From Pristiophorus japonicus (lineage: Eukaryota), in contig NC_091999.1 in the NCBI RefSeq assembly GCF_044704955.1, positions 50,468,001-50,532,000 of the forward strand: 64,000 nt of DNA. The letters run 5' to 3'. Of the stretch, positions 31,765-64,000 are shown piece by piece. The notes under the pieces are model-generated. The model was not told the DNA's origin and ran no database searches. It was given only the letters and a program-made list of their open reading frames with translations. How positions within the stretch are numbered: the first letter of the stretch is position 1; the number at the start of each line of letters is the position of its first letter. Both the position numbers and the translations under genes were made by a program.

Positions 31765-31796
<32 letters not shown>

Positions 31797-32002: not shown

Positions 32003-32030
32003 AGTATTTGACACAACGTGTCTCACTCTG
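32003..32030 (-). other. recombination signal sequence, 12-bp spacer (D2 5' type), degenerate
   Basis: AGTATTTGA (6/9 to GGTTTTTGT) + 12 nt + CACTCTG (6/7 to CACTGTG). No nonamer is present at the 23-bp position. Confidence 0.7.
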
Positions 32031-32080
32031 TTACGCAATTGGCTACTGGGGACAAGGGACCATGGTGACGGTGACTGCAG
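32031..32080 (+). pseudogene. IGHJ: JH segment (probably D2-J pre-joined)
   Basis: It encodes YAIGYWGQGTMVTVTA, followed by a gtaagg donor at 32081. Confidence 0.93.
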
Positions 32081-43871: not shown

Positions 43872-43872
43872 A

Positions 43873-44066
43873 TTAATTGCCGGTGCTTTTAGTGTCCCCC
43901 TCCCCTTTTATAGGGGGCACTTGGAGAAAAAATATGTTTTTGTGCCCAAAAAAAAACCCCAAAAAATACCACCAAAAATAAAAGGGCCTGTAAATGTTTG
44001 GTATTTCCCCCAGACCCGGGGGGGGGGGGGTACGGTTTAATGTTTTTTGTTTACTCCCAAAAAGAG
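43873..44066 (+). mobile_element. Tx1-like element, 3' UTR-only stub (copy 0)
   Basis: ttaattgccggtgctttt...aaaagag matches the last ~160-190 bp of the three long copies. Confidence 0.9.
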
Positions 44067-45010
44067 TTTCATGCACAAGGACCAATGATGGAGCTTTGGA
44101 GGCGTGGCCTATGCACTTGGAGCCTGGCTGCTGTGAGAGAAGGAACTCCCTGCTTTAGCTTCTGTCTGGAAGGCCTGGAGTGAGCCCTGAGACCAGCCCA
44201 GGAACAGGAGGTAGGAAGGGGCTTCATTACCATTCATCTCGAGGGAGAGGAGGAGAGCAGAAGACTGCAACACCTTCATTATTTCAACAAAGAGTTGGAA
44301 AGAGGTGGAAAAAAGAACAACAACTTACCAGTGTGGAAGGAGGGAAAGACTTCTTCAGCCAAAGGTGGGTGTGTTTTGGTGCATTCACCAAAAATACTTT
44401 GTTGTATCGGTGGGGGGAGGAAAGAAGACCAATCGAGGGCCAGAACACCGCGGGGGGGGGGGGGGTGTGTGTGTGGAAGTGTGTGTGGGGGTCTTGCCTA
44501 CAGCTAGGCCCACACACCACTGAACACCCCTCACCCAATTGCCTAGCCTGGGATAGCTGGAGCTACCAGGCTGAAGAAACTGAATCACCCTAATTAACAT
44601 CGTTGGGAGTGTATACCTGTGTGGCTCCAGCTGCCCCAGGTGAAGACATCTTCTCCCCCCAGCCGAAGATCACCCCAAAGACTGTTTTGTTTGCCATCTG
44701 TGGAGTGCACCCACCCATTACTGTGAAGGGAGACCTGCCCTTGCAGCCTCCCTCTTTCCCACACCCCATCACTCTGTCTCTCTCTCTGTCTCCCCCCTCT
44801 CTCTCTGAGAGCCTTTCCTCCCAATTGGGAAAAAAAGACAAGAACAATTAAGACAACTGAGCAGAGGGAGCAAGGCCCCTCCCCAATTGCAAACTAGGGG
44901 AGAGGAGTGCCTCTTTCAGAGCTCCCGCTGTTAAAAACTTAAACGAGGCCAGTTAAGACCATTAAGGCCTGTGACTTTGGGGTGGATGTCGCCCTTAAAG
45001 GGACCCCGTG

Positions 45011-47071
45011 ATGGCGACCCCATCCACGCTGGTGGCAGGGCCAGCTAGGAATTATGCGCAGGCGGCGTCCACATCCACGGCGCCTCCTGCGCCTCCTGTT
45101 GCCCTGCCACCATTAAGACTGATAACTAAAAAACACGGGGTCAAGGGCTACACTCACCCCACAATGAGCATTGAGGAGTGCGCGCGGGCGATGGCTGGGG
45201 TAGTCGGCCCCTGGGCCATTGTCGCAGCCTCCAAGATGTCTGGGAAGGCCGTGTTCTTCCTGGGGTCGGAGCGACCGGTGTCCCTGGCCCTTGAAAAGGG
45301 GCTCACGGTGGGCGGGACTTTCCTGCCAGTGGACCCTCTCGAGGTCACCACGCAGAGGGTCATCATTTCAAACGTCCCGCCCTTTGTTCCCGCTGAGCTC
45401 CTCCTCCCTCACCTACACCAACTGGGGGAGGTAAGGTCGGGGATCAACCTCATACCGCTCGGCCTCAGGGAGACCAGCCTCTGCCATGTGTTCTCCTTCC
45501 GCCGCCAGCTCTTTGTCCGGCTGGCGCGGGAGGAGAAGACGGAGGGCTATTTTAATGTGGTGCACGAGGGGACTGCCTACCGCGTCTTCTGGACGTCGAA
45601 CGGCGTGCGGTGCCATGCCTGTAGGGAGGTGGGGCATGTTCGCAAGAACTGCCCCGCCAACAAGGCTGCCAAACCACCGAGGGCGTCCAAGGCTGGCGCC
45701 GCCGCCACCCCTCCCCCTAGTAGCGTCCACTTGCCGGGAGCCATAGGTGCGCGGGCATCATCGGGGGCCTTTGTTTTCACGGCCGGAAAGAAGGCGCGGA
45801 AGAAGGCGAAACATCCCCTCGGTGCGCCAAACAACTTGTTTACCGCGCTCGGCCAAACCCCGTCACCGGCGAGCGCGGGGTGCCCTGAGCCCGTGCCCGA
45901 GCCCTTGACTAGTATCACCGAGGGGTTCGGGCGTGGGCAAGACAAGAAAAAGGGGGGAGTGGAGCGGGAGGCTTCGGCAGACATGGGGGTCTCCCTGCCT
46001 CCGCGCACCCCCAGGAAAAAAAGGAGGCGCCGCTCCAATGAGGTGGAGGGAGAACAACATCCCTCCGCGGAGGAGTCGGTGCCCGTCGCGTGTCCCGCGT
46101 CCCCCACCATCGCCCCCGAACTGCGCTGTAGGCGTGAGGAATCTGTCCCCGGGGAGGGTGAGGCAGTCGAGGCTGCCCAGCCGCTGCCTCCCGGGGATGA
46201 TGTGGAAGATCTGCCTGTCGTGGGGGGCGTGGGGCCAGCGGAAGAATCGGTAGCCGCCGGGTCGAGCGTCCCGGGGACTGAGGCGGGCGAGGCCGAAAAG
46301 GCCGAACCTGAGGCCGCCCAGCCAATACCCAACTTCCCCCGGGATTTGCTCGACTCGGCAGAAGCTGACACTGCAGACAACTGTAATATACATCCACACG
46401 CTGGGCCGGTGGGAGGCGGCGGGGAGGGGGAAGAACAACAACCCTCACCCCCTACTTTGGAGCTGGGATACTTGGTGGACCTGGAGAATTTCCTCAACCA
46501 GGTCTCTCCGTGTTCCCCGGCTCCTGGGGCGGAGGAGGAACCCCTTCCGCTGTCGCTTCCCGACCCAGCACCACTTTTAAAAATGCTCAGTGGGGACTCC
46601 TCTGCCGACGATCGTGGGGGTGGGATCTGGGCAGAGCCAGGGCCAGATGGAGCGGCCGGGCCGTTTGCCGTATCTCGTGCGGTCGATGGGCCGGCTGCTG
46701 GCGGCGACCTCCCGGAGGGGGACGGAGACTCGGTGGGGGACGCAGGAGAAGATCTAGAGACCATCGCCAGTGAGGCGGTGGATCTGCTCGCGGCCGCCGC
46801 TGAGACCCTCCTCATTCCTGTAAAGGAACTCCGGGACTTTTTGGTCCAGTGCCGGGGTCGCCGCGACCAAGCACGTCTGGCCCGGGAAAGATGGTCTGAG
46901 CCAGTGTTGCTCGTCGCTTCCGTCCGCACCGCAGCTAAAAGCATGGCCGCGGGCGGGCCCTTATCAAAGGCGCAATGCCTTGAGCTGCGCCGGCTACAAA
47001 AAGTTCCTCGCTGGGCTGCTGAAGGAGTGGAGGTCAACAAACGACTCCACTCCCCCCCCACAATAGGTTAG
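45011..47071 (+). CDS. Tx1 ORF1 (gag-like; CCHC knuckle CHACREVGHVRKNC; long Pro/Glu/Gly-rich C-terminus), with an apparent frameshift near the end
   Basis: This is the 687-aa ORF, with RVIISNVPPFVP, FSFRRQLFV and CX2CX4HX4C. Confidence 0.85.
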   Translation: MATPSTLVAGPARNYAQAASTSTAPPAPPVALPPLRLITKKHGVKGYTHPTMSIEECARAMAGVVGPWAIVAASKMSGKAVFFLGSERPVSLALEKGLTVGGTFLPVDPLEVTTQRVIISNVPPFVPAELLLPHLHQLGEVRSGINLIPLGLRETSLCHVFSFRRQLFVRLAREEKTEGYFNVVHEGTAYRVFWTSNGVRCHACREVGHVRKNCPANKAAKPPRASKAGAAATPPPSSVHLPGAIGARASSGAFVFTAGKKARKKAKHPLGAPNNLFTALGQTPSPASAGCPEPVPEPLTSITEGFGRGQDKKKGGVEREASADMGVSLPPRTPRKKRRRRSNEVEGEQHPSAEESVPVACPASPTIAPELRCRREESVPGEGEAVEAAQPLPPGDDVEDLPVVGGVGPAEESVAAGSSVPGTEAGEAEKAEPEAAQPIPNFPRDLLDSAEADTADNCNIHPHAGPVGGGGEGEEQQPSPPTLELGYLVDLENFLNQVSPCSPAPGAEEEPLPLSLPDPAPLLKMLSGDSSADDRGGGIWAEPGPDGAAGPFAVSRAVDGPAAGGDLPEGDGDSVGDAGEDLETIASEAVDLLAAAAETLLIPVKELRDFLVQCRGRRDQARLARERWSEPVLLVASVRTAAKSMAAGGPLSKAQCLELRRLQKVPRWAAEGVEVNKRLHSPPTIG

Positions 47072-47096
47072 GTAGAGGTTGCACTATGCTCTAGTC

Positions 47097-49102
47097 ATGA
47101 AGATAACCATAGCCAGCCTCAACATCAACGGCGGCAGAGGGGCACGCCGTAGATTTGACAATTTTTCGCTCCTGCGGGAGGGGAAATATGCGGTGGAGCC
47201 TTTCCTGCGCCTCTTGCGGACGAGGTTGACGGGACTGGCTCTGCAAGGGCCGGGCGTGGAAGTCGTCCTCTCGGCTTACGCCGATGACGTGCTCCTCGCG
47301 GTAGAGGATCCCGCTGACCTGCGGAGGATGTGTGAGTGCCAGGAGATTTATTCGACCGCGTCCTCCGCCAGAATCAATTGGGAGAAATGTTCCGGACTCC
47401 TGGTGGGTCAGTGGCGGGTGGACTCCCTGCCGGAGGAGCTCAGGCTTTTTGCCTGGAGCACGACCCATCTCCTCTATCTGGAAGTCTACCTTAGCCCCGA
47501 CGAGGAAGTGTGGGTGGCGAACTGGCAGGAGCTGGAGGCCAAGGTCGCCGCTCGCCTAGGCCGCTGGACAGGACTGCTCCGAGTGCTGTCCTACAGGGGT
47601 CGAGCGCTAGTCATAAACCAGCTGGTGGCAGCCATGTTGTGGTACCGGCTGGTCACTTTGAGCCCTCCCCCTGCGTTTGTCGCCAAGATACAGAAGAAGC
47701 TGGTGGACTTCTTCTGGAACAACAGGAAGCACTGGGTCTCTGCCGCGGTCTTGAGTCTCCCGCTTGGGGAGGGTGGTCAGTCGTTGTTGTGCGTCAGCGC
47801 CCAGCTCGCGACTTTCCATCTTCAGACCCTGCAGAGATATCTTTACGTCGAGCCTCCTCCTAGGTGGCCTGCTCTGGCAATGTATTTATTTCGCCAGCAG
47901 CACGGCCTCAACAACAACACGCAGCTCCTGTTTGTGAGTGTGGGGGCGTCAGGACCGCCCTCCGGGAGCTGCCTGTCTTTTACAAGGAACTCATCAGGGT
48001 CTGGAACAAAGTCTCCAGCAATCCCAGCTCTGCACCGGCTGGAGTGGCGGCCGTCCTGCAGGAGCCGCTGCTCGGGAATCCGTAACTCCACGGCCGAGGT
48101 TTTTTGTGGCGGTCGGATGAGAGGGCTGTGGCTGGTGAGGTGACCAGAGTCAGGGACCTGCTCGATGGCGGAGGAGCGGGCTGGATGGCGCCAGACACGC
48201 TGGCACGGCGCCTAAATTCTGCCAACGTCCGCAATGCGGCCGATGCCATCGAGTCGCTAAAAAGAGCTCTGGTCCCCGACTCCGTTTGGTGCATCGAGAA
48301 GGCTCAAGCACGTGGGGAGATCCCGTCCGAACTGACCCCCGTCCGGACAGAATTCCTCATTGGCGCCAAACCCCGGAACCTCCCTCGGGGGCCGGCGCCT
48401 CACAACTTGAGCCGCCTCGGGGAAATCCCCTCCGTGCCTTTCAGTTCCACGCGGAGGGGTTTCCTGTACGGGCTGCTCCTGCACACTCTCAACTTTGCCA
48501 ACCTCGCCTGCCGTCCGGACACGCCATGGCGTACCATCTTGCCGTCCGGAAGAGGCGCGGGTCACCGATGGAGGGCACTCGACGCAGGCGTCCTCCCAGT
48601 ATTTATCGGGGACTTGGCCTGGAGGGTGGTGCACGGAGCAGTCCCGTGCAATAAATTATTAAGCCGGTTCACGGGCTCCCAGGCCGCCTTCAATTTCTGC
48701 GGTCTAAAAGAGTCCGTGTTCCATGTTTTTATTGAGTGCACGAGGTTGCAGTCCCTGTTTTGTTATTTAAAGGGGCTGCTCCTGAAATTCTGGCTGCACT
48801 TCAGTCCCACACTCCTGATCTTCGGGCACCCTGTGCGGAGGGGAGCGGGTTGGTCCGAGGGCCTCCTCGTTGGACGGCTCCTGGGCACGGCCAAGGGAGC
48901 CATCAGCCGGTCCAGGCAGCGGGCGGTCGTGGGGGTCGTTCAGCCAGACTGCCTGCCTCTCTTCCGCTCTTACATCCAGTCCAAGCTGTCCTTGGAGATG
49001 GAGCACGCGGTGTCCACCGGTACGCTCGCGGCCTTCCACGAGAGGTGGGCACCGGAGGGACTGGAGTGCATCATCACGCCCGGCAACCAAGTTTTAATTT
49101 GA
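47097..49102 (+). pseudogene. Tx1 ORF2 copy 1, lacking the endonuclease and RT N-half
   Basis: MKITIASLNING..GKYAV is fused at 47195/96 to EPFLRLL..AYADDV. There is a frameshift at ~47945 and a stop at ~48083, then the C-terminal FCGLKESVFHVFIEC. Confidence 0.88.
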
Positions 49103-49285
49103 CTTTAGGTGTTTAATTGCCGGTGCTTTTCGTGTCCCCCTCCCCTTTTGTAGGGGGCACTTGGATAAAAATTCAATTCTGTGCCCAAAAAAAAAAGGAC
49201 ATTGTAAATGTTGGCGTTTCCCCCAGATCGGGGGCACGGTTTAATGTTTTTTGTTTACTCCTAAAGGAGTTTATGCACAAGGAAC

Positions 49286-52200
49286 AATGGTGGCGCTTTG
49301 GAGGCGTGGCCTATTCACTTGGAGCTGTGCTGCTGAGAGAGAAGGAACTCCCTGCTTTGCTCCTGTCTGGGAGGCCTTGAGTGAGCCCTGAGACCAGCCC
49401 AGGAATAGGAGGAGGAAGGAAGGGGCTATATTACCATTCTTCCAGAGGGATAGGAGGAGAGCAGAAGACTGCAACAACTTGATTAATTCTACAAAGATTT
49501 GGAGAAAGGGGGAAAAAACAACTGTGTGGAAGGAGGGAAAGACTTCTTCAACCAGATGTGGGTGTGTTTTGGTGCATTCCCCAATAGACTTTGTTGTATC
49601 GGTGGGGGGAGGAAAGAAGACCTATCGAGGGCCGGAACATCGCGGAGGGTGTGTGTGTGTGTGTGGAAGTGTGTGTGGGGGTCTTGCCTACAGCTAGGCC
49701 CACACTCCACTGAAGCACCCCTCCCCCATTTCCTAGCCTGGGATAGCTGGAGCTACCAGGCTGAAGAAAGTCAATCACCCTAATTAACATGGTTGGGAGT
49801 GTGTAACTGTGTGGCTCCAGCTGCCCCAGGTGAAGACATCTTCTCCACCCACCCGAAGACCACCCCAAAGACTCTTTTGTTTGACATCTGGGAGTGCACC
49901 CACCCACTGCTGTGAGGGGAGACCTGCGCTCGCAGCTTCCCTCTTTCCCATCCCCCCTCTTCCTCTATCTATCTCGCTCTGTCTCTCCCCTCTCTCTCTG
50001 AGAGCCCTTTCCTCCTAATTAAAAAAAAACAAACAATTAAGACAACTGAGCAGAGGGAGCAAGGCCACTCCCCAATTGCCAACTAGGGGAGAGGTGTGCC
50101 TCTTTCAGAGCTCCCTCTCTTCAAATATTTAAACGAGGCCATTTAAGACCATTAAGGCCTGTGACTTTGGGGTGGGTGTAGCCGTTAAAGGGACCCCGTG
50201 AAGGCGACCGCATCCACGCCGGTGGCAGGGCCAGCTAGGCCATATGCGCAGGTGGCAAGCGCTTCCACGGCACCTCCTGCGTCTCCTGCTGCCTGCCACC
50301 ATTCAGACTGATAATTAAAAAACACGGGGTCAAGAGCTACACTCACCCCACAATGAGCATCGAGCAGTGCGTGCGTGCGATGGCTGGGGTAGTCGGCACC
50401 TCGACCATTGTCGCAGCCTCCAAGATGTCTGGGAAGGCCGTGTTCTTCCTGGGGTCGGAGCGGGCGGTGTCCCTGGCCGTCGAAAAGGGGCTCACGGTGG
50501 GCAGGACGTTTCTGCCGGTAGACCCTCTCGAGGCCACCGCGCAGAGGGTCATTCTATCGAACGTCCCGCCCTTTGTTCCCGCTGAGCTACTCCTCCCTCA
50601 CCTACACCAACTGGGGGAGGTAAGGTCGGGGATCAACCCCATACCGCTCGGCCTCAGGGAGAACAGCCTGCGCCATGTGATCTCCTTCCGCCGCCAGCTC
50701 TTTGTCCGGCTGCCGCGGGAGGAGACAACAGAGGGCAATTTTAATGTGGGGCATGAGGGGACTGCCTACCGCGTCTTCTGGACGTCGGACGGCGTGCGTT
50801 GCCATGCCTGTAGGGAGGTGGGACACGTTCGCAAGAACTGCCCCGCCTCCAAAGCCGCCAAACCACCGAAGGCGGCCAAGGCTGGCGCCGCCACCACCCC
50901 TCCCCCTAGTTGCGTTCGCGTGCCGGAAGCCGTCGGTGCGCGGGCATCGTCGGGGGCCTTTGTTTTCAGGGCCTCCGGCGGGGGGGAGGGAGAGCGTCCG
51001 GCCGGAAGGAAGGCGCGGAAGAAGACGAAACATCTCGAGGCGGGTCCCTTCGGTGCGCCAGACAATCTGTTTATCACGCTCAGCCCAACCCCGTCACCGG
51101 CGAGCGCGGGGTGCCCTGAGCCCGTGCCCGAGCCCTCGATCAATACCGCAGAGGTGTTCGGGCGCGGGCATGATAAGGAAAAGGGGGGAGTGGAGCAGGA
51201 GGCCTCGGCAGACATGGGGGTCTCCTTGCCTCCGCTCACTCCCAGGAACAAAAGGAGGCGCCGCTCCAATGAGGCGGAGGGGGAACAACATCCCTCCGTG
51301 GAGAAGTCGGTGCCCGCCGCGTGTCCCGCGTCCCCCACCAGCGCCCCCAAGCTGCGCTGTAGGCGAGAGGAGTCTGTCCCCGGGGAGGGTGAGACATTCG
51401 AGGCTGCCCAGCCGCTGCCTCCCGGGGATGGCGTGAAAGATCTGCCTGTCGTGGGGGGCGTGGGGCCAGCGGAAGAATGTGTAGCCGCTGGATCGAGCGT
51501 CTCGGGGACTGAGGCGGGCGGGGCCGAAAAGGCCAAACCAGAGCCCGCTCAGCCAATACCCAACTTCCCCCGGGATTTGCTCGACTCGGCAGAAACTGAC
51601 ACTGCAGACAACTGTAATATACATCCACACGCTGGGCCGGGGTTGGCGGTGGGGAGGGGGAAGAACAACAAAGCTCGCCCCCTACTTTGGAGCTGAGGGA
51701 CTTGATGGACCTGGAGAATTTCCTAAACCAGGTCTCTCCATGTTCCCCGGATCCTGGGGCGGAGGAGGAACCCCTTCCGCTGAAGCTTCCCGACCCAGCA
51801 CCAATTTTAGAAGAGCCCAGTGGGGACACCTCTGCTGACGATTCTGGGGGTGGGATCGGAACAGAGCCAGGGCCAGATGGAGCGGCCGGGCCGTTTGCCG
51901 TATCTCGTGCGGTCGACGGGCCGGCTGCTATTGGCAACCTCCCGGAGGGGGACGGGGACTCGGTGGGGGCCGCGGGTGAAGATCTCGAGTGCATCGCCTG
52001 TGAGGAGGTGGTTCTGCTCGCGGCCGCCGCTGAGACCCTCCTCATTCCTGCAAAAGAACTCTGGGACTTTTTGGTCCAGTGCCGGGGTCGCCGCGACCAA
52101 ACCTGACTGGCCCTGGAAAGATGGTCTGAGCCGGTGTTGCTCATCGCTTCCGTCCACGCCGCCACTAAAACCATGGCCGCGGGTGGGCCCTTATCAAAGG

Positions 52201-55200
52201 CTCAAGGCTTTGAGATGAGCCGGCTCCAAAAGTTCCTCGCTGGGCTGCTGAAGGAGTGGAGGTCAACAAACGACTCCACTCCCCCTCCCACAATAGGTTA
52301 GGTAGAGGTTGCACTATGCTCTAGTCATGAAGATAACCATAGCCAGCCTCAACATCAACGGCGGCAGAGAGGCACGCCGTAGATTTGACAATTTTTCGCT
52401 CATGCGGGAGGGGAAATATGCGGTGTGCTTCCTGCAAGAAACCTACACCGTTCCGGGAGATGAAGCCACGTGGCTCCTGGAATGGCAAGGAGAGGTCCGC
52501 ATGAGGCACATCACTACCACTTCTAGTGGGGTGGCCATCTTGTTGGCCCCGCATTTTCAGCCGGAGATCTTGGGGGTCGAGGATCTCGTTCCAGGCCGCT
52601 TGCTGCACGTAAAGGTTCGCCTGGGGGACGTGCCACTCCATCTCGTGAACGTGTACGCCCGTCAGCCCGGCCCGCAGCAAGTGCGCTTCTTCGAAGAAGT
52701 GTTCGCTCTTCTTGGCTCCGTCGACGTCGGCGACTGCATTATCCTCGGGGGGGGGGGATTTTAACTGCACCCTCGAGGCGATGGACCGCTCCAGTGCCCC
52801 GCAGAGCATGACGGTGATGGAGAAGTTGAGGGACCTGGTCGGGTCCTTCGACTTGGTGGACGTCTGGCGAAATCTCCATCCCGACTCCAGCGCCTTTACT
52901 TGGGTGAGGCCTGGAGTAGGATGGTCCACAGTCGACCGCGTTTACGTGTCTCGGGCAGACGTTTCCTGCGTCCTGGCGGCCTCCATGCGGCCGGTGCCAT
53001 GTTCGGACCACCACCTGGTCTGGGCGGAGCTCGCTTCGCTCCGCACGAGAACGGGGTCCGCATAGTGGTATTTTATCAACCAGCTGCTGGAGGACGTTTC
53101 TGGGCCGACAGGAGAAGGAAGCAGGGTGGCTTCCCCTCCTTGAGGCTATGGTGGGACGTGGGCAAGGCTCACGTCCGCGTCTTCTGTCAAGAATACGCGA
53201 GCGGCTCGACCAAGAGGCGGGCGGCCAGGGTCGGGCGCCTGGAAAAAGAGGTGCTCGAACTGGAGCCCGTCTCGGTCAAGTCTTCCAGGACCCGGCCCTG
53301 CGGATGGTGTACGAAGCGAAGACGGCCGCGCTGAAGGATCTGCAGCTCGTCGGGTCCCGAGGCGCGTTCGTGAGGTCGCGGATCCGGTTCCTGCGGGATC
53401 TGGACCGTGACTCCGCCTTTCTTCTACTCGCTGGAAAAAAGAGAGGGTGTCGGTAAGCAGCGCTTGACGCTGCTGGCCGACGACGGCTCTCTATCTCGGA
53501 TCCGGAGGGCGTCAACAACATGGCCCGTGAATATTACGGGGCTCTGTTCTCTCCGGATCCGTCCAGCGAGGAAGTGCATAGAGTTTTGTGGGAGGACCTG
53601 CCGAAGGTCAGCCCGGAGGGCGCCGAAAATCTGGAAGCTCCGCTAAGCCTGGCGGAGCTGACCGGTGCCCTCGACCGGCTCTCGAGGGGAATATCCCCGG
53701 GGCTGGACGGGCAGACCGTGGAGTTCCACAGGGCGTTCTGGGACGTCCTGGGGAGCGACTACGCGCGGGTCCTGGGGGAAAGTCTGGCGACCGGGGAGAT
53801 GCCCCTCTCTTGGCGCAGGGCAGTCATCGTCCTGCTGCCTAAGAAGGGCGATCTCCGCCTCCTTAAAAACTGGCGCCCGGTCTCCCTCCTCAGCACGGAC
53901 TACAAAATCTTTGCCAGGGCGATGTCTGCTCGCCTTGGTGCCGTGCTGGACCACATGATCCACCCCGACCAGTCCTGCACGGTCCCGGGCCGGACAATCC
54001 ACGCTAACATCCATCTGGTCCGGGACCTCATCCATCATTTCCAGGAGGCTGGTCTGACGGTCGCCTTCCTATCCCTCGACCAAGAGAAGGCGTTCGACAG
54101 GGTGGATCACGACTATCTGCTCGGAACTCTGCGCGCTTTCGGCTTCGGGACGCATTTCGTCGCCCGGATCCGACTTTTGTACGCCGCCGTGGAGTGTGTG
54201 ATTAAGGTTAACGGGTCCTTGACGGCGCCCCTTCGCTTTAGGAGAGGGGTGATCCAGGGATGCCCCATGTCTGGCCAGTTATACGCCGTCTGCGTGGAGC
54301 CTTTCCTGCGCCTCTTGCGGACGAGGTTGACGGGACTGGCTCTGCAAGGGCCGGGCGTGGAAGTCGTCCTCTCGGCTTACGCCGATGACGTGCTCCTCGC
54401 GGTAGAGGATCCCGCTGACCTGCGGAGGATGCGTGAGTGCCAAGAGATTTACTCGGCTGCATCCTCCGCCAGAATCAACTGGGAGAAATATTCCTGGTTC
54501 CTGGTGGGTCAGTGGCGGGTGGACTCCCTGCCGGAGGAGCTCAGGCCTTTTGCCTGGAGCACGACCCATCTCCTCTACCGGGGAGACTACCTTCGCCCCG
54601 ACGAGGGAGCCTGGCCGGCGAACTGGCAGGAGCTGGAGGCCAAGGTCGCCGCTCGCCTAGGGCGCTGGACAGGACTGCTCCGAGTGCTGCCCTACAGGGG
54701 TCGAGCGCTAGTCATAAACCAGCTGGTGGCCGCAATGCTGTGGTACCTGCTGGTCACTTTGACCCCTTCCCCTGCGTTTGCCACCAAGATACAGAAGAAG
54801 CTGGTGGACTTCTTCTGGAACAACAGGAAGCACTGGGTCTCTGCCGCGGTCTTGAGTCTCCCGCTTGAGGAGGGCGGTCAGTCGTTGGTGTGCGTCAGCG
54901 CCCAGCTTGCGAATTTCCATCTTCAGACCCTGAAGAGATACCTTTACGTCGAGCCCCCTCCTAGGTGGTGTGCTCTGGCGAGGTATTTCTTCCGCGAGTA
55001 GCACAGCCTCAACTACGACACGCAGCTCCTGTTTGTGAGTGTGGGGGGCGTCAGGACAGCCCGCCGGGAGCTGCCTGTCTTTTACAAGGAACTCATCAGG
55101 GTCTGGAACAAAGTCTCCACCAAGCGCAGCTCTCCGCCGGCTGGAGTGGCGGCCGTCCTGCAGGAGCCGCTGCTCGGGAATCCGTACCTCCACGGCCGAG

Positions 55201-56400
55201 GTTTTAGGTGGCGGTCGGACGAGAGGGCTGTGGCTGGTGAGGTGACCAGGGTCAGTGACCTGCTCGATGGCGGAGGAGCGGGCTGGATGGCGCCAGACAC
55301 GCTGGCGCGGCGCCTAAATTCTGCCAATGTCCGCCACGCGGCCGATGCCATCGAGTCGCTAAAAACAGCTCTGGGCCCCGACTCCTTTAGGTGCATCGAG
55401 GAGGCTCAAGCACGTGGGGAGATCCCGTCCGAACTGACCCCCGTCCAGACGGAATTCCTCATCGGCGCCAAACCCCGGAACCTCCCTCGGGGGCCGGCGC
55501 CTCACAACTTGAGCCGCCTCGGGGAAATCCCCTCCATGCCTTTCAGTTCCACGCAGAGGGGTTTCCTGTACGGGCTGCTCCTGCACACTCTCAACTTTGT
55601 CATCCTCGCCTGCTGTCCTTACACGCCATGGCGTACCATCTTGCCGTGCGGAGGAGGCGGGGGTCCTCGATGGAGGGCACTCTACGCAGGGGTCCTCCCA
55701 CTATTTGTCGGGGACTTGGCCTGGAGGGTGGTGCACGGAGCAGTGCCGTGCAATAAATTTTTAAGCCGGTTCACGCGCTCCCAGGCCGCCTGTAATTTCT
55801 GCGGTCTGGAAGAGTCCGTGTTCCATGTTTTTATTGAGTGCACGTGGTTGCAGCCCCTGTTCTGTAATTTAAAGGGGCTGCTCCTGAAATTCTGGCTGCA
55901 CTTTAGTCCCACACGCCTGATCTTCTGGCACCCTGTGCGGAGGGGAGCGGGTAGGTCCGAGGGCCTTCTCGTAGGACTGCTCCTGGGCACGGCCAAGGGG
56001 GCCATCAGCCGGTCCAGGCAGCAGGCGGTCGAGGGGTTCGTTCAGCCATACTTCCTGCCTCTCTTCTGCGCATACATCCGGTCCAGGGTGTCCTTGGAGA
56101 TGGAGCACGCGGTGTCCACCGGTACGCTCGCGGTCTTCCGCGAGAGGTGGGCACCAGAGGGACTGGAGTGCATCGTCACGCCCGGCAACCAAATTTTAAC
56201 TTGATTTTATATTTTTAAGTTAATTTGTTTTAATTGCCGGTGCTTTTAGTGTCCCCCTTCCCTTTTATAGGGGGCACTTGGAAAAAAAATTTGATTCTGT
56301 GCCCCAAAAAAAAAAAAATTTAAAAAAGGGACTTGTAAATGTTGGTGTTTCCCACAGATCGGGGGGCACGGTTTAATTATTTTGTTTACTCCTAAAAGAG
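49286..56400 (+). mobile_element. Tx1-clade retrotransposon copy 2 (full length ~7.1 kb, both ORFs disrupted)
   Basis: ORF1 spans ~50200-52295 with the start codon mutated and frameshifts. ORF2 spans 52327-56204. Confidence 0.93.
52327..56204 (+). pseudogene. Tx1 ORF2 copy 2 (APE endonuclease, RT, C-terminal CCHC), several frameshifts and stops
   Basis: Motifs: SLNING, LQET, VNVYA, GDFN, SDHH; SPGLDG, NWRPVSLL, LDQEKAFD, QGCPMS, YADD; CNFCGLEESVFHVFIEC. Confidence 0.9.
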
Positions 56401-57360
56401 TTTGATGCACAAAGACCAATGGTGGAGCTTTGGAGGCGTGGCCTCTTCACTTGGAGCTGTGCTGCTGAGAGAGAAGGAACTCCCTGCTTTGCTCCTGTCT
56501 GGGATGCCTTGACTGAGCCCTGAGAACAGACCAGGAATAGGAGGAGGAAGGAAGGAGCTTCATTACCATTTATCCAGAGTGAGAGGAGGAGAGCAGAAGA
56601 CTGCAACACCATTATTATTCCTACGAAGAGTTCGAGAGAGGGGAAAAAAAAAGAACAACAACTTACCAGTGTGGAAGGAGGGAAAGACTTCTTCAACCAG
56701 AGGTGGGTGTGTTTTGGTGCATTCCCCAAAAAGACTTTGTTTTATCGGTTGGGGGGAGGAAAGAAGACCAATTGAGGGCCGGAACATCGCGGGGTGTGTG
56801 TGTGTGTGTGTGTGTGTGTGTTGAAGTGTGTGTGGGGGTCTTGCCTACAGCTAGGCCCACACACCACTGAAGCACCCCTCCACCATTGCCTAGCCTGGGA
56901 TAGCTGGAGCTACCTGGCTGAAGAAACTCAATCACCCTGAATAACATCGGTGGGAGTGTGTACCTGTGTGGCTCCAGCTGTCCCAGGTGAAGACATCTTC
57001 TCCACCCACCCGAAGACCACCCCAAAGACTGTTTTGTTTGACATCTGGGGAGTGCACCCACCCATCGCTGTGAGGGGAGACCAGCCCTCGCAGCTTCCCT
57101 CTTTTCCACGTCGCCTGGCTCTTTCACTCTTTCTCTGTCTCTCCCCTCTCTCTCTGAGAGCCTTTCCTCCCAATTGGGAAAAAAAGACAAGAACAATTAA
57201 GACAACTGAGCAGAGGGAGCAAGGACCCTCCCCAATTGCCAACTAGGGGAGAGGTGTGCCTCTTTCAGAGCTCCCTCTGTTCAAATACTTAAACGAGGCC
57301 ATTTAAGACCATTAAGGCCTGTGACTTTGGGGTGGGTGTAGGCCTTAAAGGGACCCTGTG

Positions 57361-59286
57361 ATGGCGACCCCATCCACGCCGGTGGCAGGGCCAGCGAGGA
57401 CATATGCGCAGGTGGCAACCGCTTCCACGGCACCTCCTGTGCCTCCTGCTGCCCTGCCACCATTCAGACTTATAGCCAAGAAACACGGGGTCAAGAGCTA
57501 CACTCACCCCACAATGAGCATCGAGCAGTGCGTGCGGGCGATGGCTGGGGTAGTCGGCCACTCGGCCATTGTTGCAGCCTCCAAGATGTCTGGGAAGGCC
57601 GTGTTCTTCCTGGGGTCAGAGCGAGCGGTGTCCCTGGCCATTGAAAAGGGGCTCACGGTGGGCGGGACGTTCCTGCCGGTGCATCCTCTCGAGGCCACCG
57701 CGCAGAGGGTCATCATTTCAAACGTCCCGCCCTTTGTTGCCGCTGAGCTCCTCCTTCCTCACCTACACCAACTGGGGGAGGTAAGGCCGGGGATCAACCC
57801 CATACCGCTCGGCCTCAGGGAGAACAGCCTGCGCCATGTGTTCTCCTTCCGCCATCAGCTCTTTGTCCGGCTGGCGCGGGAGGAGACGACGGAGGGCTAT
57901 TTTAATGTGGTGCACGAGGGGACTGCCTACCGCGTCTTCTGGACGTCGGACGGCGTGCGGTGCCATGCCTGCAGGGAGGTGGGGCACGTTCGCAAGAACT
58001 GCCCCGCCTCCAAAGCCGCCAAACCACCGAAGGCGGCAAAGGCTGGTGCCGCCGCCACCCCTCCCCCGAGTAGCGTCCACGTGCCGGGAGCCGTAGGTGC
58101 GCGGGAATCGTCGGAGGCCTTTGTTTTCACGGCCTCCGGCGGGGGGGAGGGAGAGCGTCCGAGCGGAAAGAAGGCACGGAAGAAGACGAAACATCTAGAG
58201 GCGGGACCCCTCAGTGCGCCAGACAATCTGTTTACCGCGCTCGGGCCAACCCCGTCACCGGCGAGCGCGGGGTGCCCTGAGCCCGTGCCCGAGCCCTTGA
58301 CCAGTATCACAGAGGCGCTCGGGCGCGGGCAAGAAAAGAAAAAGGCGGGGGTGGAGCGGGAGGCCTCGTCAGACATGAAGGTCTCCCTGCCTCCACGCCC
58401 TCCCAGGAACAAAAGGAGGTGCGGCTCCAATGAGGCGGAGGGGGAACAACATCCCTCCGCGGAGGAGTCGGTGCCCGCCGCGTGTCCCGCGTCCCCCACC
58501 AGAGCCCCCAAATTGCGCTGTAGGCGCGAGGAATCTGTACCCGGGGAGGGTGAGGCAGTCGAGGCTGCCCGGCCTCTGCCTCCCGGGGATGGCGTGAATG
58601 ATCTGCCTGTCGTGGGGTGCGTGGGGCCAGCGGTGGAATGCGTAGCCGCCGGGTCGAGCGTGCCCGGGACTGAGGCAGCCGGGGCCGAACAGGCCGAACC
58701 TGAGCCCGCCCAGCTATTAATTATCTGCCCCCTAGAGTCGCTCGGCCCGGAAGAAACTGAAAATGGATTAATTTTAACGATTCTGTACACGCTGGGCCGG
58801 GGGGGTGGCGGCGGGGAGGGGGAAGAACAACAACCTTCGCCACCTACTTTGGAGCTGGGGTACTTGGTGGACCTGGAACATTACTTTGACCAGGTCTCTC
58901 CGTGTTCCCCGGTTCCTGGGGCGGAGGAGGAACGCCTTCCGCTGTCGCTTCCCGACCCAGTACCAATTTTACAAGAGCCCAGTGGGGACTCCTCTGCCGA
59001 CGATCCTGGGGGTGGGATCGGGGCAGAGCCGGGGCCAGATGGAGCGGCCGGGCCGTTTGCCGTACCTCGTGCGGTCGACGGGCCGGCTGCTGACGGCGAC
59101 CTCCCGGAGGAGGACGGGGACTCGGTGGGGGACGCGGGTGAAGATCTCGAGTCCATCGCCAGTGAGGCGGTGGATCTCCTCGTGACCGCCGCTGATTCCC
59201 CCGTCATTCCCGTAGAGGAACTCCGGGACTTTTTGGTCCAGAGCCAGGGTCGCCGCAACCAAACCCATCTGGCCCGGGAAAGATGA
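57361..59286 (+). CDS. Tx1 ORF1 copy 3 (ends early at a TGG>TGA change)
   Basis: This is the 642-aa ORF with the CCHC knuckle. Copies 1 and 2 have TGG at the stop position. Confidence 0.8.
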   Translation: MATPSTPVAGPARTYAQVATASTAPPVPPAALPPFRLIAKKHGVKSYTHPTMSIEQCVRAMAGVVGHSAIVAASKMSGKAVFFLGSERAVSLAIEKGLTVGGTFLPVHPLEATAQRVIISNVPPFVAAELLLPHLHQLGEVRPGINPIPLGLRENSLRHVFSFRHQLFVRLAREETTEGYFNVVHEGTAYRVFWTSDGVRCHACREVGHVRKNCPASKAAKPPKAAKAGAAATPPPSSVHVPGAVGARESSEAFVFTASGGGEGERPSGKKARKKTKHLEAGPLSAPDNLFTALGPTPSPASAGCPEPVPEPLTSITEALGRGQEKKKAGVEREASSDMKVSLPPRPPRNKRRCGSNEAEGEQHPSAEESVPAACPASPTRAPKLRCRREESVPGEGEAVEAARPLPPGDGVNDLPVVGCVGPAVECVAAGSSVPGTEAAGAEQAEPEPAQLLIICPLESLGPEETENGLILTILYTLGRGGGGGEGEEQQPSPPTLELGYLVDLEHYFDQVSPCSPVPGAEEERLPLSLPDPVPILQEPSGDSSADDPGGGIGAEPGPDGAAGPFAVPRAVDGPAADGDLPEEDGDSVGDAGEDLESIASEAVDLLVTAADSPVIPVEELRDFLVQSQGRRNQTHLARER

Positions 59287-59488
59287 TCCGAGCTGGGGCT
59301 GCTCATCGCTTCCGTCCGCACCGCCACTAAAACCATGGCCGCGGGCGGGCCCTTACTAAAGGCGCAAGGCCTTGAGCTGCGCCGGCTCAAAAGGTTCCTC
59401 GCTGGGCTGCTGAAGGAGTGGAGGTCAACAAACGACTCCACTCCCCCCGCCACAATAGGTTAGGTCGAGGTTGCACTATGCTTTTGTC

Positions 59489-62400
59489 ATGAAGATAACC
59501 ATAGCCAGCCTCAACATCAACGGCAGCAGAGAGGCACGCCGTAGATTTAACAATTTTTCGCTCCTGCGGGAGGGGAAATATGCGGTGTGCTTCCTGCAAG
59601 AAACCCACACCTTTCCGGGAGACGAAGCCACGTGGCTCCTGGAATGGCAAGGAGAGGTCCTGATGAGCCACCTCACTGCCACTTCTAGTGGGGTGGCCAT
59701 CTTGCTGGCCCCGCATTTTCAGCCGGAGATCTTGGGGGTCGAGGAGCCCATGCCAGGCCGCTTGCTGCACGTAACGGTTCGCCTGGGGGACGTGCCGCTC
59801 CATCTCGTGAACGTGTACGCCCCTCAGCCCGGCCCGCAGCAAACGCGCTTCTTCGAAGAGGTGTCCGCTCTTCTTGGCTCCGTCGACGTCGGCGACTGCA
59901 TTGTCCTCGGGGGGGATTTTAACTGCACCCTCGAGGCGAGGGACGGCTCCGGTGCCCCGCAGTGCATGACGGCGATGGAGAAGTTGTGGGACCTGGTCGG
60001 GTCCTTCGACTTGGTGGACGTCTGGCGAAATCTCCACCCCGACCCCAGCGCCTTTACTTGGGTGAGGCTTGGAGTTGGATGGTCCACAGTCGACCGCCTT
60101 TACGTGTCTCGGGGGTACGTTTCCTGTGTCCCGGCGGCCTCCATGCGGCTGGTGCCGTGTTCGGACCACCACTTGGTGTGGGCGGAGCTCGCTTCGCTCC
60201 GCGCGAGGACGGGGTCCGCGTACTGGCACTTTAACAACCAGCTGCTGGAGGACGTGCGGTTCCAGGACTCGTTCCGTCGTTTCTGGTCCGACTGGAGAAG
60301 GAGGCAGGGGGGCTTCCCCTCCTTGAGGCTATGGTGGGACGTGGGCAAGGCTCACGTCCGCGTCTTCTATCAAGAGTACGCGAGGGATTCGACCAAGAGG
60401 CGGGCGGCCAGGGTCGGGCGTCTAGAAAAAGAGGTGCTCGACCTGGAAGCCCATCTCGGTCAAGTCGTCGGGGACCCGGCCCTGCGGACGGTGTACGAAG
60501 CGAAGAAGGCCCCGCTAAATGACCTGCAGCTCGTCGGGTCCCGAGGCGCGTTCGTGAGGTCACGGATCCGGTTACTGCGGGATCTGGACCGCGACTCCCC
60601 CTTCTTCTACTCGCTGGAAAAAAGGCAGAGTGTCCGTAAGCAGCTCTTGACGCTGCTGGCCGACGACGGCTCTATCTCGGATCCGGAGGGCGTCAACAAC
60701 AGGGCCCGTGAATATTACGGTGCCCTGTTCTCTCCGGAGCCGTCCAGTGAGGAAGCGCGTAGAGTTTTGTGGGAGGACCTGCCGAAGGTCAGCCCGGAGG
60801 GCGCCGAAAATCTGGAAGCTCCGCTAAGCCTGGCGGAGCTGACTGGCGCCCTCGACCGGCTCTCGAGGGGAAAATCCCCGGGGCTGGACGGGCTAACCGT
60901 GGAGTTCCACAGGGCGTTCTGGGACGTCCTGGGGGGCGACTACGCGCGGGTCCTGGGGGAAAGTCTGGCGACCGTGGAGATGCCCCTCTTTTGGCGCAGG
61001 GCAGTCATCGTCCTGCTGCCTAAGAAGGGTGATCTCCGCTGCCTTAAGAACTGGTGCCCGGTCTCCCTCCTCAGCACGGACTACAAAATCTTCGCCAGGG
61101 CGATGTCTGCTTGTCTTGGTGCCGTGCTGGACCACATGATCTATCCCGACCAGTCCTACACGGTCCCGGGCCGTCAATCCAGGATAACATCCATCTGGTC
61201 CGGGACATCATCCATTATTCCAAGGAGGCTGGTCTGTCGGTCGCCTTCCTATCTCTCGACCAAGAGAAGGCGTTCGACAGGGTGGATCATGACTATCTGC
61301 TCGGAACTCTGCGCGCTTTCGGCTTCGGGACGCATTTCGTCGCCCGGATCCGACTTTTGTACACCGCCGCGGAGTGTCTGATTAATGTTAACGGGTCCTT
61401 GACGGCGCCCCTTCGCTTTGGGAGAGGGGTGCGCCAGGGATGCCCCATGTCCGGCCAGTTATACGCCGTTTGCGTGGAGCCTTTCCTGCGCCTCTTGCGG
61501 ACGAGGTTGACGGGACTGGCTCTGCAAGGGCCGTGCGTGGAGTTCGTCCTCTCGGCTTATGCCGATGACGTGCTCCTCACGGTAGAGGATCCCGCTGACC
61601 TGCGGAGAATGCGTGAGTGCCAGGAGATTTACTCGGCCGCATCCTCCGCCAGAATCAACTGGGAGAAATGTTCCGGACTCCTGGTGGGTCAGTGGCGGGT
61701 GGACTCCCTGCCGGAGGAGCTCAGGACTTTTGCCTGGAGCACGACCCATCTCCTCTATCTGGGAGTCTACCTTAGCCCGGACGAGGAAGTGTGGGTGGCG
61801 AACTGGCAGGAGCTGGAGGCCAAGGTCGCCGCTCGCCTAGGGCGCTGGACAGGACTGCTCCGAGTGCTGTCCTGCAGGGGTCGAGCGCTAGTCATAAACC
61901 AGCTTGTGGCCGCCATGTTGTGGTACCGGCTGGTCACTTTGACCGCTCCACCTGCGTTTGTCGCCAAGATACAGAAGAAGCTGGTGGACTTCTTCTGGAA
62001 CAACAGGAAGCACTGGGTCTCTGCCGCGGTCTTGAGTCTCCCGCTTGGGGAGGGCGGTCAGTCGTTGGTGTGCGTCAGCGCCCAGCTTGCTACTTTCCAT
62101 CTTCAGACACTGCAGAGATACGTTTACGTCGAGCCCCCTCCTAGATGGCGTGCTCTGGCGACGTATTTCTTCCGCCAGCAGCGCGACCTCAATTACGACA
62201 TGCAGCTCCTGTTTGTGAGTGTGGGGGGCGTCAGGACCGCCCTCCGGGAGCTGCCTGTCTTTTACAAGGAACTCATCAGGGTCTGGAACAAAGTCTCCAC
62301 CAAACGCAGCTCTCCACCGGCTGGAGTGGCGGCCGTCCTGCAGAAGCCACTGCTCGGGAATCCGTACCTCCACGACCGAGGTTTTAGGTGGCGGTCGGAT

Positions 62401-63383
62401 GAGAGGGCTTTGGCTGGTGAGGTGACCAGGGTCAGGGACCTGCTCGATGGCGGAGGAGCGGCTTGGATGGCGCCAGACACGCTGGCGTGGCGCCTAAATT
62501 CTGCCAACGTCCGCCGCGCGGCTGATGCCATCGAGTCGCTAAAAACAGCTCTGGGCCCCGACTCCATTAGGTGCATCGAGGAGGCTCAAGCATGCGGGGA
62601 GATCCCATCCGAACTGACCCCCGTCCGGACGGAATTTCTCATCGGCGCCAAACCCCGGAACCTCCCTCGGGGCCGGCGCCTCACAACTTGAGCCGCCTCG
62701 GGGAAATCCCCTCCGTGCCTTTCAGTTCCGCGCGGAGGGGTTTCCTGTACGGGCTGCTCCTACACACTCTCAACTTTGCCATCCTTGCCTGCCGTCTGGA
62801 CACGCCATTGCGTACCATCTTGCCGTCCAGAGGAGGCGGGGGATCCTGATGGAGGACACTCTACGCAGGGTTCCTCCCACTATTTGCCGGGGACTTGGCC
62901 TGGAGGGTGATGCACGGAGCAGTGCCGAGCAATAAATTTTTAAGCCGGTTCACGGGCTCCCAGGCCGCCTGCAATTTCTGCGGTCTGGAAGAGTCCGTGT
63001 TCCATGTTTTTATTGAGTGCACGAGGTTGCAGCCCCTGTTTTGTTATTTAAAGGGGCTGCTCCTGAAATTCTGGCTGCACTTCAGTCCCACTCTCCTGAT
63101 CTTCGGGCACCCTGTGCGGAGGGGAGCGGGTAGGTCCGAGGGCCTCCTCGTAGGACTGCTCCTGGGCACGGCCAAGGGGGCCCTCAGCCGGTCCAGGCAG
63201 CAGGCGGTCGAGGGGGTCGTTCAGCCAGACTGCCTGCCTCTCTTCCGCGCATACATCCGGTCAAGGGTGTCCCTGGAGATGGAGCATGCGGTGTCCACCG
63301 GTACACTCGTTGCCTTCCGCAAGAGGTGGTCACCAGAGGGACTGGAGTGCATCATCACGCCCGGCAACCAAATTTTAACTTGA
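59489..63383 (+). pseudogene. Tx1 ORF2 copy 3 (EN-RT-CCHC), frameshifts near 61172, 62670 and 62845
   Basis: Motifs LQETH, VNVYAP, GGDFN, SDHH, KSPGLDG, GVRQGCPMSG, YADD and YLGV are present. Confidence 0.9.
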
Positions 63384-63562
63384 TTTCATATTTTTAAGTT
63401 AATTTGTTTTAATTGCCGGTGCTTTTAGTGTCCCCCGCCCCTTTTATAGGGGGCACTTGGAGAAAAAATATGCTTTTGTGCCAAAAATAAACCTTGTAAA
63501 TGTTGGTGTTTCCCCCAGATCGGGGGGCACGGCTTAATGTTTTTTGTTTGCTCCTAAAAGAG

Positions 63563-64000
63563 TTTCATGCACAAGGACCCCCAAGTCCCTCTGCATCGCA
63601 GCATTTTATAATTTCTCCCCATTCAAATAATATTCCCTTTTGCTGTTTTTTTTCCCTCAAGGTGGATGACCTCACACTTTCCGACATTGAATTCCATCTG
63701 CCAAATCTTAGCCCATTCTCTAACCTATCTAAATTTCTTTGCAGCCTCTCTGTGTCCTCTGCACAACCCGTTTTCCCACTAATCTTTGTGTCATCTGCAA
63801 ATTGTGTTACACTATACTCTGTCCCCTCTTCCAGGTCATCTATATATATTGTAAACAGTTGTAGACCCAGCCCCGATCCCTGTGGCACACCACTAACCAG
63901 CGATTTCCGACCCAAAAAGGACCCATTTATCGCGACTCTCTGCTTTCTGTTAGCCAGCCAATTTTCTATCCATGCTAATACTTTTCCTCTGACTCCACGT
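63563..64000 (-). mobile_element. CR1 LINE, upstream (RT) part of the element split by the Tx1 array
   Basis: It reads GVPQGSGLG..FADDTK..RDLGVLVHE and ends where the 43177-43871 piece resumes, with only ~3 codons missing. Confidence 0.93.

What the first reader, a model, noticed from the sequence alone, without database searches (positions are those of the whole stretch)
43873..63579. Candidate sequence-specific Tx1 retrotransposon that targets CR1 LINEs and stacks head-to-tail at one site
Seen: four Tx1 3' ends all stop at ...AAA(A/G)GAG and are each followed by the same motif: TTTCATGCACAAGGACC (44067-83), TTT-ATGCACAAGGAAC (49270-85), TTTGATGCACAAAGACC (56401-17) and TTTCATGCACAAGGACC (63563-79). 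The first three run straight into the next element's 5' end (AATG(A/G)TGG..). The last runs into CR1, where the motif is native sequence (antisense of the GVLVHE codons downstream of the RT FADD motif). The CR1 halves on either side of the array are collinear. Known: Tx1-clade elements are often target-specific (Tx1L/Tx2L in Xenopus DNA transposons, Keno in U2 snRNA, Mutsu in 5S rDNA, Dewa in tRNA arrays). Inference: the motif is a ~17-bp target-site duplication regenerated at each insertion. The element would then be a parasite of a very abundant LINE that it uses as a safe harbour and inactivates. I do not know of a described CR1-targeting Tx1, but cannot check novelty.
Basis: partly seen in the sequence, partly recalled or inferred. 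Interest (0 to 1): 0.92.

Follow-up and report, generated by a model that had tools for sequence, protein, structure and literature searches.

The report
Tx1-type LINE stacked in CR1 site
Three decayed copies and one stub of an L1/Tx1-type jumping gene sit head to tail at one exact 17-letter spot inside another jumping gene (a CR1 LINE) of a cartilaginous fish, which adds a new target to the known Tx1 habit of aiming at other repeats.

Summary
Window 43873-63579 carries a 194-bp 3' stub (e0) and three near full-length elements (E1-E3, about 7.1 kb, with APE endonuclease, RT and zf-RVT). All lie on the + strand inside one antisense CR1 copy.

- **Motif:** each 3' end (..AAA[A/G]GAG) is followed by TTTCATGCACAAGGACC or a 1-2 change variant. 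This motif occurs nowhere else in the window.
- **Origin of the motif:** it is native CR1 sequence. It encodes DLGVLVHE about 70 codons after FADD and lies about 700 bp from the CR1 3' end.
- **Flanks:** the CR1 flanks are collinear, minus 7 bp at the left junction.

At least two separate landings hit the same nucleotide, because e0 is 5'-truncated and joins CR1 directly. Assembled contigs of this genome put the canonical motif next to the element's ends in 22-27 sequence variants per run. One contig from another locus shows motif, 12-nt tail, motif, truncated copy.

Site-specific insertion with a 16-17 bp target duplication is therefore well supported. E2 and E3 could still be a local tandem duplication.

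This scan has already reported the same thing on many other pieces of this genome. Tx1 elements that target other transposons and stack around a TSD are published (Kojima 2015). I found no paper that names CR1 as a target.

The parts
43177..43872 (-). 3' part of the host CR1-type LINE (left flank). Its 3' end is at about 43177, with (TTCTTATG)x3 at about 43177-43201.
   Evidence: Aligns to the unoccupied copy at 4192-4887. The octamer repeat sits at the 3' end of both copies. The - strand reads RPHLEYC..FWSPYLRKD-type ORF2 C-terminal sequence.
43873..44066 (+). e0: a 194-bp 5'-truncated 3' stub of the Tx1-type element, joined directly to CR1 with about 7 bp of target lost and no motif on its 5' side.
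   Evidence: Aligns to the last roughly 150-190 bp of E1-E3. The left junction was compared with the intact CR1 copy.
44067..44083 (+). T1: the 17-bp CR1-derived motif TTTCATGCACAAGGACC.
44084..49269 (+). E1: starts at the full-length 5' end and has an internal deletion of about 1.9 kb in ORF2. ORF1 is at 45008-47071.
49270..49285 (+). T2: the motif with one base lost and one change (TTT-ATGCACAAGGAAC).
49286..56400 (+). E2: 7115 bp, full length, with broken frames. The RT piece is at 53520-55001 and the zf-RVT piece at 55035-56204.
56401..56417 (+). T3: the motif with two changes (TTTGATGCACAAAGACC). Nearly all genomic contigs read the canonical C and G at these two places.
56418..63562 (+). 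E3: 7145 bp, full length, with broken frames. ORF1 is at 57358-59286. The ORF2 pieces are 59471-61381 (endonuclease), 61054-62691 (RT) and 62895-63383 (zf-RVT).
63563..63579 (+). T4: the native target in the CR1 copy, encoding (D)LGVLVHE on the - strand.
63580..64000 (-). Upstream (RT) part of the same CR1 copy, which runs off the window. The FADD codons are at 63790-63801.

Best explanation
This is a site-specific non-LTR retrotransposon of the L1/Tx1 kind. Its landing site is one fixed position in the RT-coding part of CR1 LINEs, about 700 bp from the CR1 3' end, and it inserts antisense to CR1. Inferred mechanism: the APE endonuclease nicks the CR1 sense strand just beside ..CATGAAA, and reverse transcription is primed there, so every element ends directly against TTTCATG... 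The second strand is then usually cut 16-17 bp further on, so the 17-mer is duplicated on both sides of the new copy. Each duplicated 17-mer remains a usable site, so later landings pile up head to tail with one 17-mer between neighbours. In this array e0 is a separate, 5'-truncated event that ended in a 7-bp target loss instead of a duplication. E1 and the E2/E3 pair are most likely further landings from one burst, since each copy is about 4% from their common ancestor. E2 and E3 may instead be one landing that was later duplicated locally. All copies here are dead, with broken frames. Shown: the anatomy, the host origin of the 17-mer, at least two events at one nucleotide, and many genomic junction variants carrying the canonical 17-mer. 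Inferred: the nick positions, the order of events, and that the endonuclease sets the specificity.
For: The motif occurs only at the four junctions, 4 matches against 0.24 expected. The CR1 flanks are collinear apart from 7 bp, and unoccupied CR1 copies hold the motif natively. The motif encodes DLGVLVHE downstream of FADD. The CR1 3' octamer repeat lies about 700 bp away. ORF2 has Exo_endo_phos, RVT_1 and zf-RVT. The RT piece is 45% identical to a protein named Transposon TX1 ORF2, scoring 373-400 bits, against 156 bits to human L1 ORF2p. In Logan contigs of the same genome, 22-27 contigs per run cover T next to element sequence. Nearly all of their depth reads the canonical letters at 56404 and 56413. 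One contig holds T, then a 12-nt tail, then T, then a copy truncated at about 55929, and that sequence is absent from the window. No other fragment of this family lies in the remaining 43.8 kb of the window. The published precedent is Tx1-Mar and SINEU-3: a 16-bp TSD in Mariner-N4_AMi, with tandem copies sandwiching a TSD that the author reads as sequential insertion (PMC4494074).
Against: Only one occupied CR1 copy could be read in full here. The contigs are about 100 nt long, so the sequence beyond T at other loci was not seen, and the 1710 unlisted loose ends could hide junctions with other flanks. E1, E2 and E3 are nearly equidistant, with 201-216 private differences each. E2 and E3 share 11 non-majority states. 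Early local duplication would produce the same pattern. Placement in the Tx1 clade rests on an automatic name and on score differences, not on a tree with reference elements.
Confidence: 0.8

Rival explanations
1. One insertion into this CR1 copy, at no preferred site, was later amplified into a tandem array. The first step would be unequal exchange or slippage between its two 17-bp target duplications, followed by exchange between elements. The repeated motif would then be copied DNA, not a regenerated target.
For: The structure T-E-T-E-T is exactly what such amplification gives. The three copies are nearly equidistant. E2 and E3 share 11 states that differ from the genomic majority while E1 shares about 1. 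This fits a duplication of an already slightly decayed copy.
Against: e0 is a 5'-truncated stub that ends at the same nucleotide but joins CR1 directly with a 7-bp loss. Under this rival it would need a 7-kb deletion whose left edge happens to fall within 7 bp of the target. The canonical 17-mer sits next to element ends in 22-27 contig variants per run, and in a mini-stack from another locus. Several of the states shared by E2 and E3 are carried by 15-42% of genomic contig depth, for example at 56070 and 56072. This points to a subfamily rather than to private mutations, although the depths are noisy.
Confidence: 0.1
2. The element is site-specific, but the 17-mer between copies is not a staggered-cut duplication. 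It would instead be carried on read-through transcripts that run from an element into the CR1 sequence behind it. It would then anneal to the nicked CR1 site, so RNA-DNA homology contributes to or sets the precision, as proposed for some rDNA-specific LINEs.
For: Every copy in a stack or in a CR1 is followed by T, so read-through RNA would carry it. The element has no poly(A) and its tail has no complementarity to the site. Kojima 2015 notes that co-transcribed target sequence can strengthen target-specific integration (PMC4494074).
Against: The 12-nt tail flanked by T on both sides is explained more simply by a staggered cut. No transcript data were examined. The two models give the same DNA structure at this locus.
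Confidence: 0.2
3. The array is an assembly artefact, that is, a single element falsely expanded.
For: No listed contig spans a whole junction plus unique flank. Repeats are hard to assemble.
Against: The three units differ by 8-11%. They also differ by a 1.9-kb deletion and several smaller indels, which a false expansion of one copy would not produce. Contigs with one mismatch in 129 nt confirm E3-specific sequence in the reads (table 8).
Confidence: 0.02

Closest known systems
Tx1-Mar LINEs and their SINEU-3 passengers in crocodilians (Kojima 2015, PMC4494074)
   Same: These are Tx1-type elements aimed at a fixed position inside another abundant transposon, with a 16-bp TSD. Tandem copies sandwich one TSD, and the author reads them as sequential insertions. 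Insertion is often in the opposite orientation to the target.
   Different: The target there is a Mariner DNA transposon, and for sister families Harbinger or LTR retrotransposons. Here the target is the RT-coding region of a CR1 LINE. No snRNA-derived head was found here: Rfam gave no match.
Tx1L / Tx2L of Xenopus laevis in Tx1D / Tx2D DNA transposons
   Same: This is the founding case of a LINE that lands at one site in another mobile element. ORF2 is of the same type: the nearest named relative of the RT here is 'Transposon TX1 149 kDa protein ORF2', at 45% identity.
   Different: The host element is a piggyBac-type DNA transposon. Relatedness to the Xenopus element itself was not tested here.
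R1 / R2 in 28S rDNA, and Keno (U2 snRNA), Mutsu (5S rDNA) and Dewa (tRNA) of the Tx1 clade
   Same: All show sequence-specific TPRT into a multicopy target, and some of these families have been reported in tandem or stacked arrangements.
   Different: Their targets are host RNA genes kept uniform by selection. Here the target is a selfish repeat whose copies decay, so usable sites are made by CR1 activity and then lost by mutation. The three unoccupied CR1 copies in this window all have diverged 17-mers.

Membership tests
Tx1 clade of non-LTR retrotransposons (L1 group) | ORF2 with an N-terminal APE-type endonuclease followed by RT | tested here: met
   Exo_endo_phos scores 7.5e-11 in 59471-61381. 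RVT_1 scores 5e-25 to 9e-35 in 61054-62691 and 53520-55001.
Tx1 clade of non-LTR retrotransposons (L1 group) | C-terminal cysteine-rich zinc-binding domain in ORF2 | tested here: inconclusive
   zf-RVT scores 26.0-26.9 bits in two copies, just under Pfam's 27.5-bit cut-off.
Tx1 clade of non-LTR retrotransposons (L1 group) | ORF1 with CCHC zinc knuckle(s) | tested here: inconclusive
   zf-CCHC scores 17-18 bits at residues 201-216 in two copies, below the 20.8-bit cut-off. ORF1 has 1720 relatives in fishes, rays and turtles over residues of about 35-230, and none carries a Tx1 name.
Tx1 clade of non-LTR retrotransposons (L1 group) | RT groups with reference Tx1 elements and not with L1 proper in a phylogeny | tested here: inconclusive
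   No reference Tx1 or Repbase sequences were available, so no tree was built. Indirect evidence: 373-400 bits and 45% identity to a protein auto-named Transposon TX1 ORF2, against 156 bits to human L1 ORF2p.
Target-specific (site-specific) LINEs | Independent insertions at the same nucleotide of the target sequence | tested here: met
   e0 and the full-length copies end at the same base before T but have different 5' junctions. A contig from another locus holds T, a 12-nt tail, T and a truncated copy.
Target-specific (site-specific) LINEs | Most genomic copies are flanked by the same target in different target copies | tested here: inconclusive
   Between 22 and 27 contig variants per run carry canonical T beside element ends. 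Other windows of this genome are reported by earlier AI notes to show the same thing, and I did not check them.
CR1 clade LINE (the target) | 3' end with an octamer microsatellite-like repeat | tested here: met
   (TTCTTATG)x2-3 ends two independent copies, at about 43177 and about 4192 on the - strand. This feature is described for amniote CR1 in PMC4316615.
CR1 clade LINE (the target) | RT with FADD and CR1-type downstream motifs; phylogenetic placement | tested here: inconclusive
   FADDTK, WQMEFNVGKCEV.H and RDLGVLVHE are read on the - strand, and ..HLEYC..FWSPYLRKD in the left flank. That these motifs resemble chicken CR1 is from my own knowledge. No tree was built. Pfam and ESM Atlas gave nothing for the 185-aa ORF of the intact copy.

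The most novel reading that the evidence does not exclude
The element belongs to an old lineage of LINEs that lives only inside the RT gene of CR1 LINEs, a hyperparasite whose supply of landing sites is made by CR1 activity. Its nearest protein relatives found here are in sea turtles (55-62% identity), whose genomes are known to be CR1-rich. If those relatives use the same CR1 codons, the pairing would date back to early jawed vertebrates or would have moved between lineages. Its endonuclease would then be a natural nickase with a 17-bp stagger and a long recognition site.
Probability: 0.12. Interest if true: 0.7.

Novelty: new member of a known kind. Interest (0 to 1): 0.5.

Why it matters
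It shows a LINE using another LINE's conserved coding motif as a safe harbour. The target is abundant, harmless to the host and renewed by CR1 activity. It offers a natural case for studying how an APE-type endonuclease reads a long site and places two nicks 16-17 bp apart, which bears on the interest in site-specific retrotransposons as insertion tools. In practice, these stacks will produce chimeric CR1/Tx1 consensus sequences and false 'subfamilies' in repeat libraries of cartilaginous-fish genomes. The principle is not new: Tx1 families aimed at DNA transposons, LTR elements, microsatellites and small RNA genes are published.

Tried and rejected
- **Fetching independent loci:** I therefore could not read the contigs behind the 75-80% identical ENA proteins or the turtle proteins.
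- **Metagenome scan:** a scan for the 20-nt junction word gave two AT-rich microbial-looking contigs with no similarity to the window, so these are chance matches.
- **ORF1 search:** ORF1 found nothing in the word-indexed search. The exhaustive search found relatives, but none with informative names.
- **Loose ends at the T boundaries:** the read-laying table shows only the best-supported rows and left 1710 out, so the flanks beyond T stayed unseen.
- **Subfamily test:** I tried to use contig depths to show that the states shared by E2 and E3 are subfamily markers. The minority shares are noisy and overlap those of private sites, so the test is only suggestive.
- **3' UTR structure:** the fold is no better than shuffles (z = -0.46) and shows no covariation among the four tails.
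- **RNA-derived head:** Rfam gave no snRNA- or tRNA-derived head.
- **CR1 ORF:** ESM Atlas and Pfam gave nothing for the CR1 C-terminal ORF.
- **CpG and transition counts:** counts of private differences are alike in the three copies and do not date them apart.
Full report
**What is there**

The 13-nt core of the motif (ATGCACAARGAMC, one mismatch allowed) occurs four times in the 64-kb window, at 44071, 49273, 56405 and 63567. All four are on the + strand. Shuffles give 0.24 matches on average and none reaches four.

Repeat finding and BLAST show three long direct repeats. E1 is 44084-49269 (5186 bp), E2 is 49286-56400 (7115 bp) and E3 is 56418-63562 (7145 bp). They are 89-92% identical pairwise, and E1 lacks about 1.9 kb internally. 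A 194-bp piece, e0 (43873-44066), matches only the last 150-190 bp of the elements.

Aligning the four junctions shows that every 3' end finishes in AAAAAGAG, AAAGGAG or AAAAGAG. Each end is followed by TTTCATGCACAAGGACC (T1 and T4), TTT-ATGCACAAGGAAC (T2) or TTTGATGCACAAAGACC (T3). After T1-T3 comes the same 5' end, AATG(A/G)TGG. After T4 comes different sequence.

**What the element is**

The ORF2 pieces carry three domains:
- Exo_endo_phos at 7.5e-11.
- RVT_1, down to 9e-35.
- zf-RVT at 26-27 bits, just under the cut-off.

ORF1 has a weak CCHC knuckle. The frames are broken in all three copies.

The best relatives of the RT piece are unnamed sea-turtle proteins at 55-62% identity and two metagenome proteins at 75-80%. 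A pufferfish protein auto-named 'Transposon TX1 uncharacterized 149 kDa protein ORF 2' is 45% identical over 420 residues. Human L1 ORF2p scores 156 bits.

ORF1 has 1720 relatives, among them proteins of a manta ray, a sturgeon, turtles and a catfish.

The element is therefore an L1-group LINE of the Tx1 type. I could not build a tree with reference Tx1 elements, so clade membership is probable rather than proven.

**What the host sequence is**

The left flank (43177-43872) and the right flank (63563-64000) align to one uninterrupted repeat copy at 4192-5304. The two alignments meet there, with about 7 bp (4891-4897) absent at the occupied site.

On the - strand the right flank reads FADDTK (63790-63801), then WQMEFNVGKCEV.H, then RDLGVLVHE. 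The last codons are the motif itself.

The left flank continues with ..HLEYC..FWSPYLRKD-type sequence. It ends about 700 bp further on in (TTCTTATG)x3, and the copy at 4192 ends the same way. An octamer repeat at the 3' end is a conserved CR1 feature (PMC4316615).

The target is thus a CR1-type LINE lying antisense to the Tx1-type elements. The 17-mer is its own sequence. Three unoccupied copies in the window hold diverged versions of it.

**One insertion copied, or repeated landings?**

Structure alone cannot separate the two for T-E-T-E-T. Four observations bear on the question.

1. **The stub e0.** It ends at the same nucleotide as the others but is 5'-truncated and joined straight to CR1, with no motif and a 7-bp target loss. 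This is the usual outcome of an abortive TPRT event. The alternative is a 7-kb deletion whose edge happens to fall 7 bp from the target, which is far less likely. So at least two events used the same bond.

2. **Contigs from the same genome.** When Logan contigs of four runs of one sample are laid on 55900-57100, 22-27 contigs per run cover the motif together with neighbouring element sequence. Nearly all their depth reads C at 56404 and G at 56413. The genomic majority beside the element's ends is therefore the canonical TTTCATGCACAAGGACC, not the local T3 variant (table 3).

3. **A mini-stack from another locus.** One contig reads ..ATGCACAAGGCC, then ACTCAAAAGAG, then TTTCATGCACAAGGC, then continues in a copy truncated at about 55929 (table 5c). 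This sequence is not in the window. A 12-nt tail with the motif on both sides shows that the motif is regenerated even for a severely truncated insertion. It is therefore not part of the element's own 5' end.

4. **No stray fragments.** No other fragment of this family lies in the other 43.8 kb of the window.

The contigs are only about 100 nt long and most loose ends were not listed. I therefore did not see CR1 beyond the motif at other loci.

**Relations among E1, E2 and E3**

A three-way alignment gives 215, 201 and 216 private differences over 5154 shared sites, with only 16 sites where all three differ. That is a near star, each copy about 4% from the common ancestor.

I used the majority letter of the genomic contigs as an outgroup at 38 listed sites. 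E2 and E3 share 11 non-majority states, E1 and E3 share one, and all three share three. So E2 and E3 are sisters.

There are two possible reasons. They may come from one subfamily, since some shared states such as 56070 and 56072 are carried by 15-42% of contig depth. Or one may be a local duplicate of the other. The data do not decide, and the depths are noisy. CpG and transition counts are alike in the three copies.

**Mechanism (inferred)**

- The first nick falls on the CR1 sense strand, beside ..CATGAAA.
- Reverse transcription is primed there.
- The second nick usually falls 16-17 bp away, giving the duplication.
- Each duplicate remains a site, so copies stack.
- e0 shows that the second break can also fall upstream, giving a target loss.

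The 17-mer could instead be carried on read-through RNA and help by annealing. This cannot be excluded here.

The 3' UTR has no poly(A). Its predicted fold is no better than shuffles and shows no covariation. No RNA-gene-derived head was found.

**Comparison with what is known**

Kojima 2015 (PMC4494074) lists Tx1 targets:
- Tx1D (piggyBac).
- U2 snRNA (Keno).
- (TC)n and (TTC)n microsatellites.
- For crocodilian families, Mariner-N4_AMi (Tx1-Mar), Harbinger elements and specific LTR retrotransposons.

The same paper gives SINEU-3 a 16-bp TSD and 'tandem insertions sandwiching a TSD', which it explains as sequential insertion. The behaviour seen here is the same. The difference is that the target is a LINE, hit in a conserved RT motif.

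Four full-text searches found no paper describing a Tx1 aimed at CR1. Repbase Reports could not be searched.

**Earlier notes of this scan**

Earlier notes of this scan report the same CR1-targeting Tx1, often stacked, on many other pieces of this genome. These are unchecked AI notes. I used them as leads only. They agree with my reading.

**Verdict**

This is a new target for a known habit, so a new member of a known kind. The interest is moderate.

Noticed in passing
window 55900-56300 versus 56310-56840: Summed contig depth over the ORF2 C-terminal part is about 100 times higher than over the last 90 bp of the 3' UTR, the motif and the 5' region (millions against 10^4). The coding 3' part may be shared with a much more abundant family or subfamily that has a different tail, and perhaps a different target. 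Alternatively, contigs may simply break at the variable A/G runs.
   Followed up: no
proteins P0001-P0030 and P0060: The closest RT relatives in the protein collection are sea-turtle proteins (Caretta, Natator, Lepidochelys, Eretmochelys) at 55-62% identity. Two unnamed ENA metagenome proteins reach 75% and 80%. Whether the turtle elements also sit in CR1 could not be checked.
   Followed up: no
window 31608-32080: Another note of this scan describes a germline-joined VD-DJ IgM cluster here. This fits a cartilaginous fish and means the Tx1 stack lies about 12 kb from an immunoglobulin heavy-chain cluster.
   Followed up: no
window 24430-25755 (+): A 441-aa ATG-started ORF, the longest outside the array, has no Pfam family and no relative among solved structures.
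   Followed up: partly
window 2241-2702 (-): A 153-aa ORF gives a weak 7tm_1 (rhodopsin-type receptor) match at 21 bits, below the cut-off. It may be a receptor gene fragment or chance.
   Followed up: no
window 29064-29424: A run of 361 N (assembly gap or masked stretch). I left it untouched.
   Followed up: no
window 4891-4914, 28139-27956 (-) and about 330-350: Three unoccupied CR1 copies carry the target position with three or more changes in the 17-mer, for example TTTAATGTTCAATTACG. This fits an element that needs the undiverged site.
   Followed up: partly
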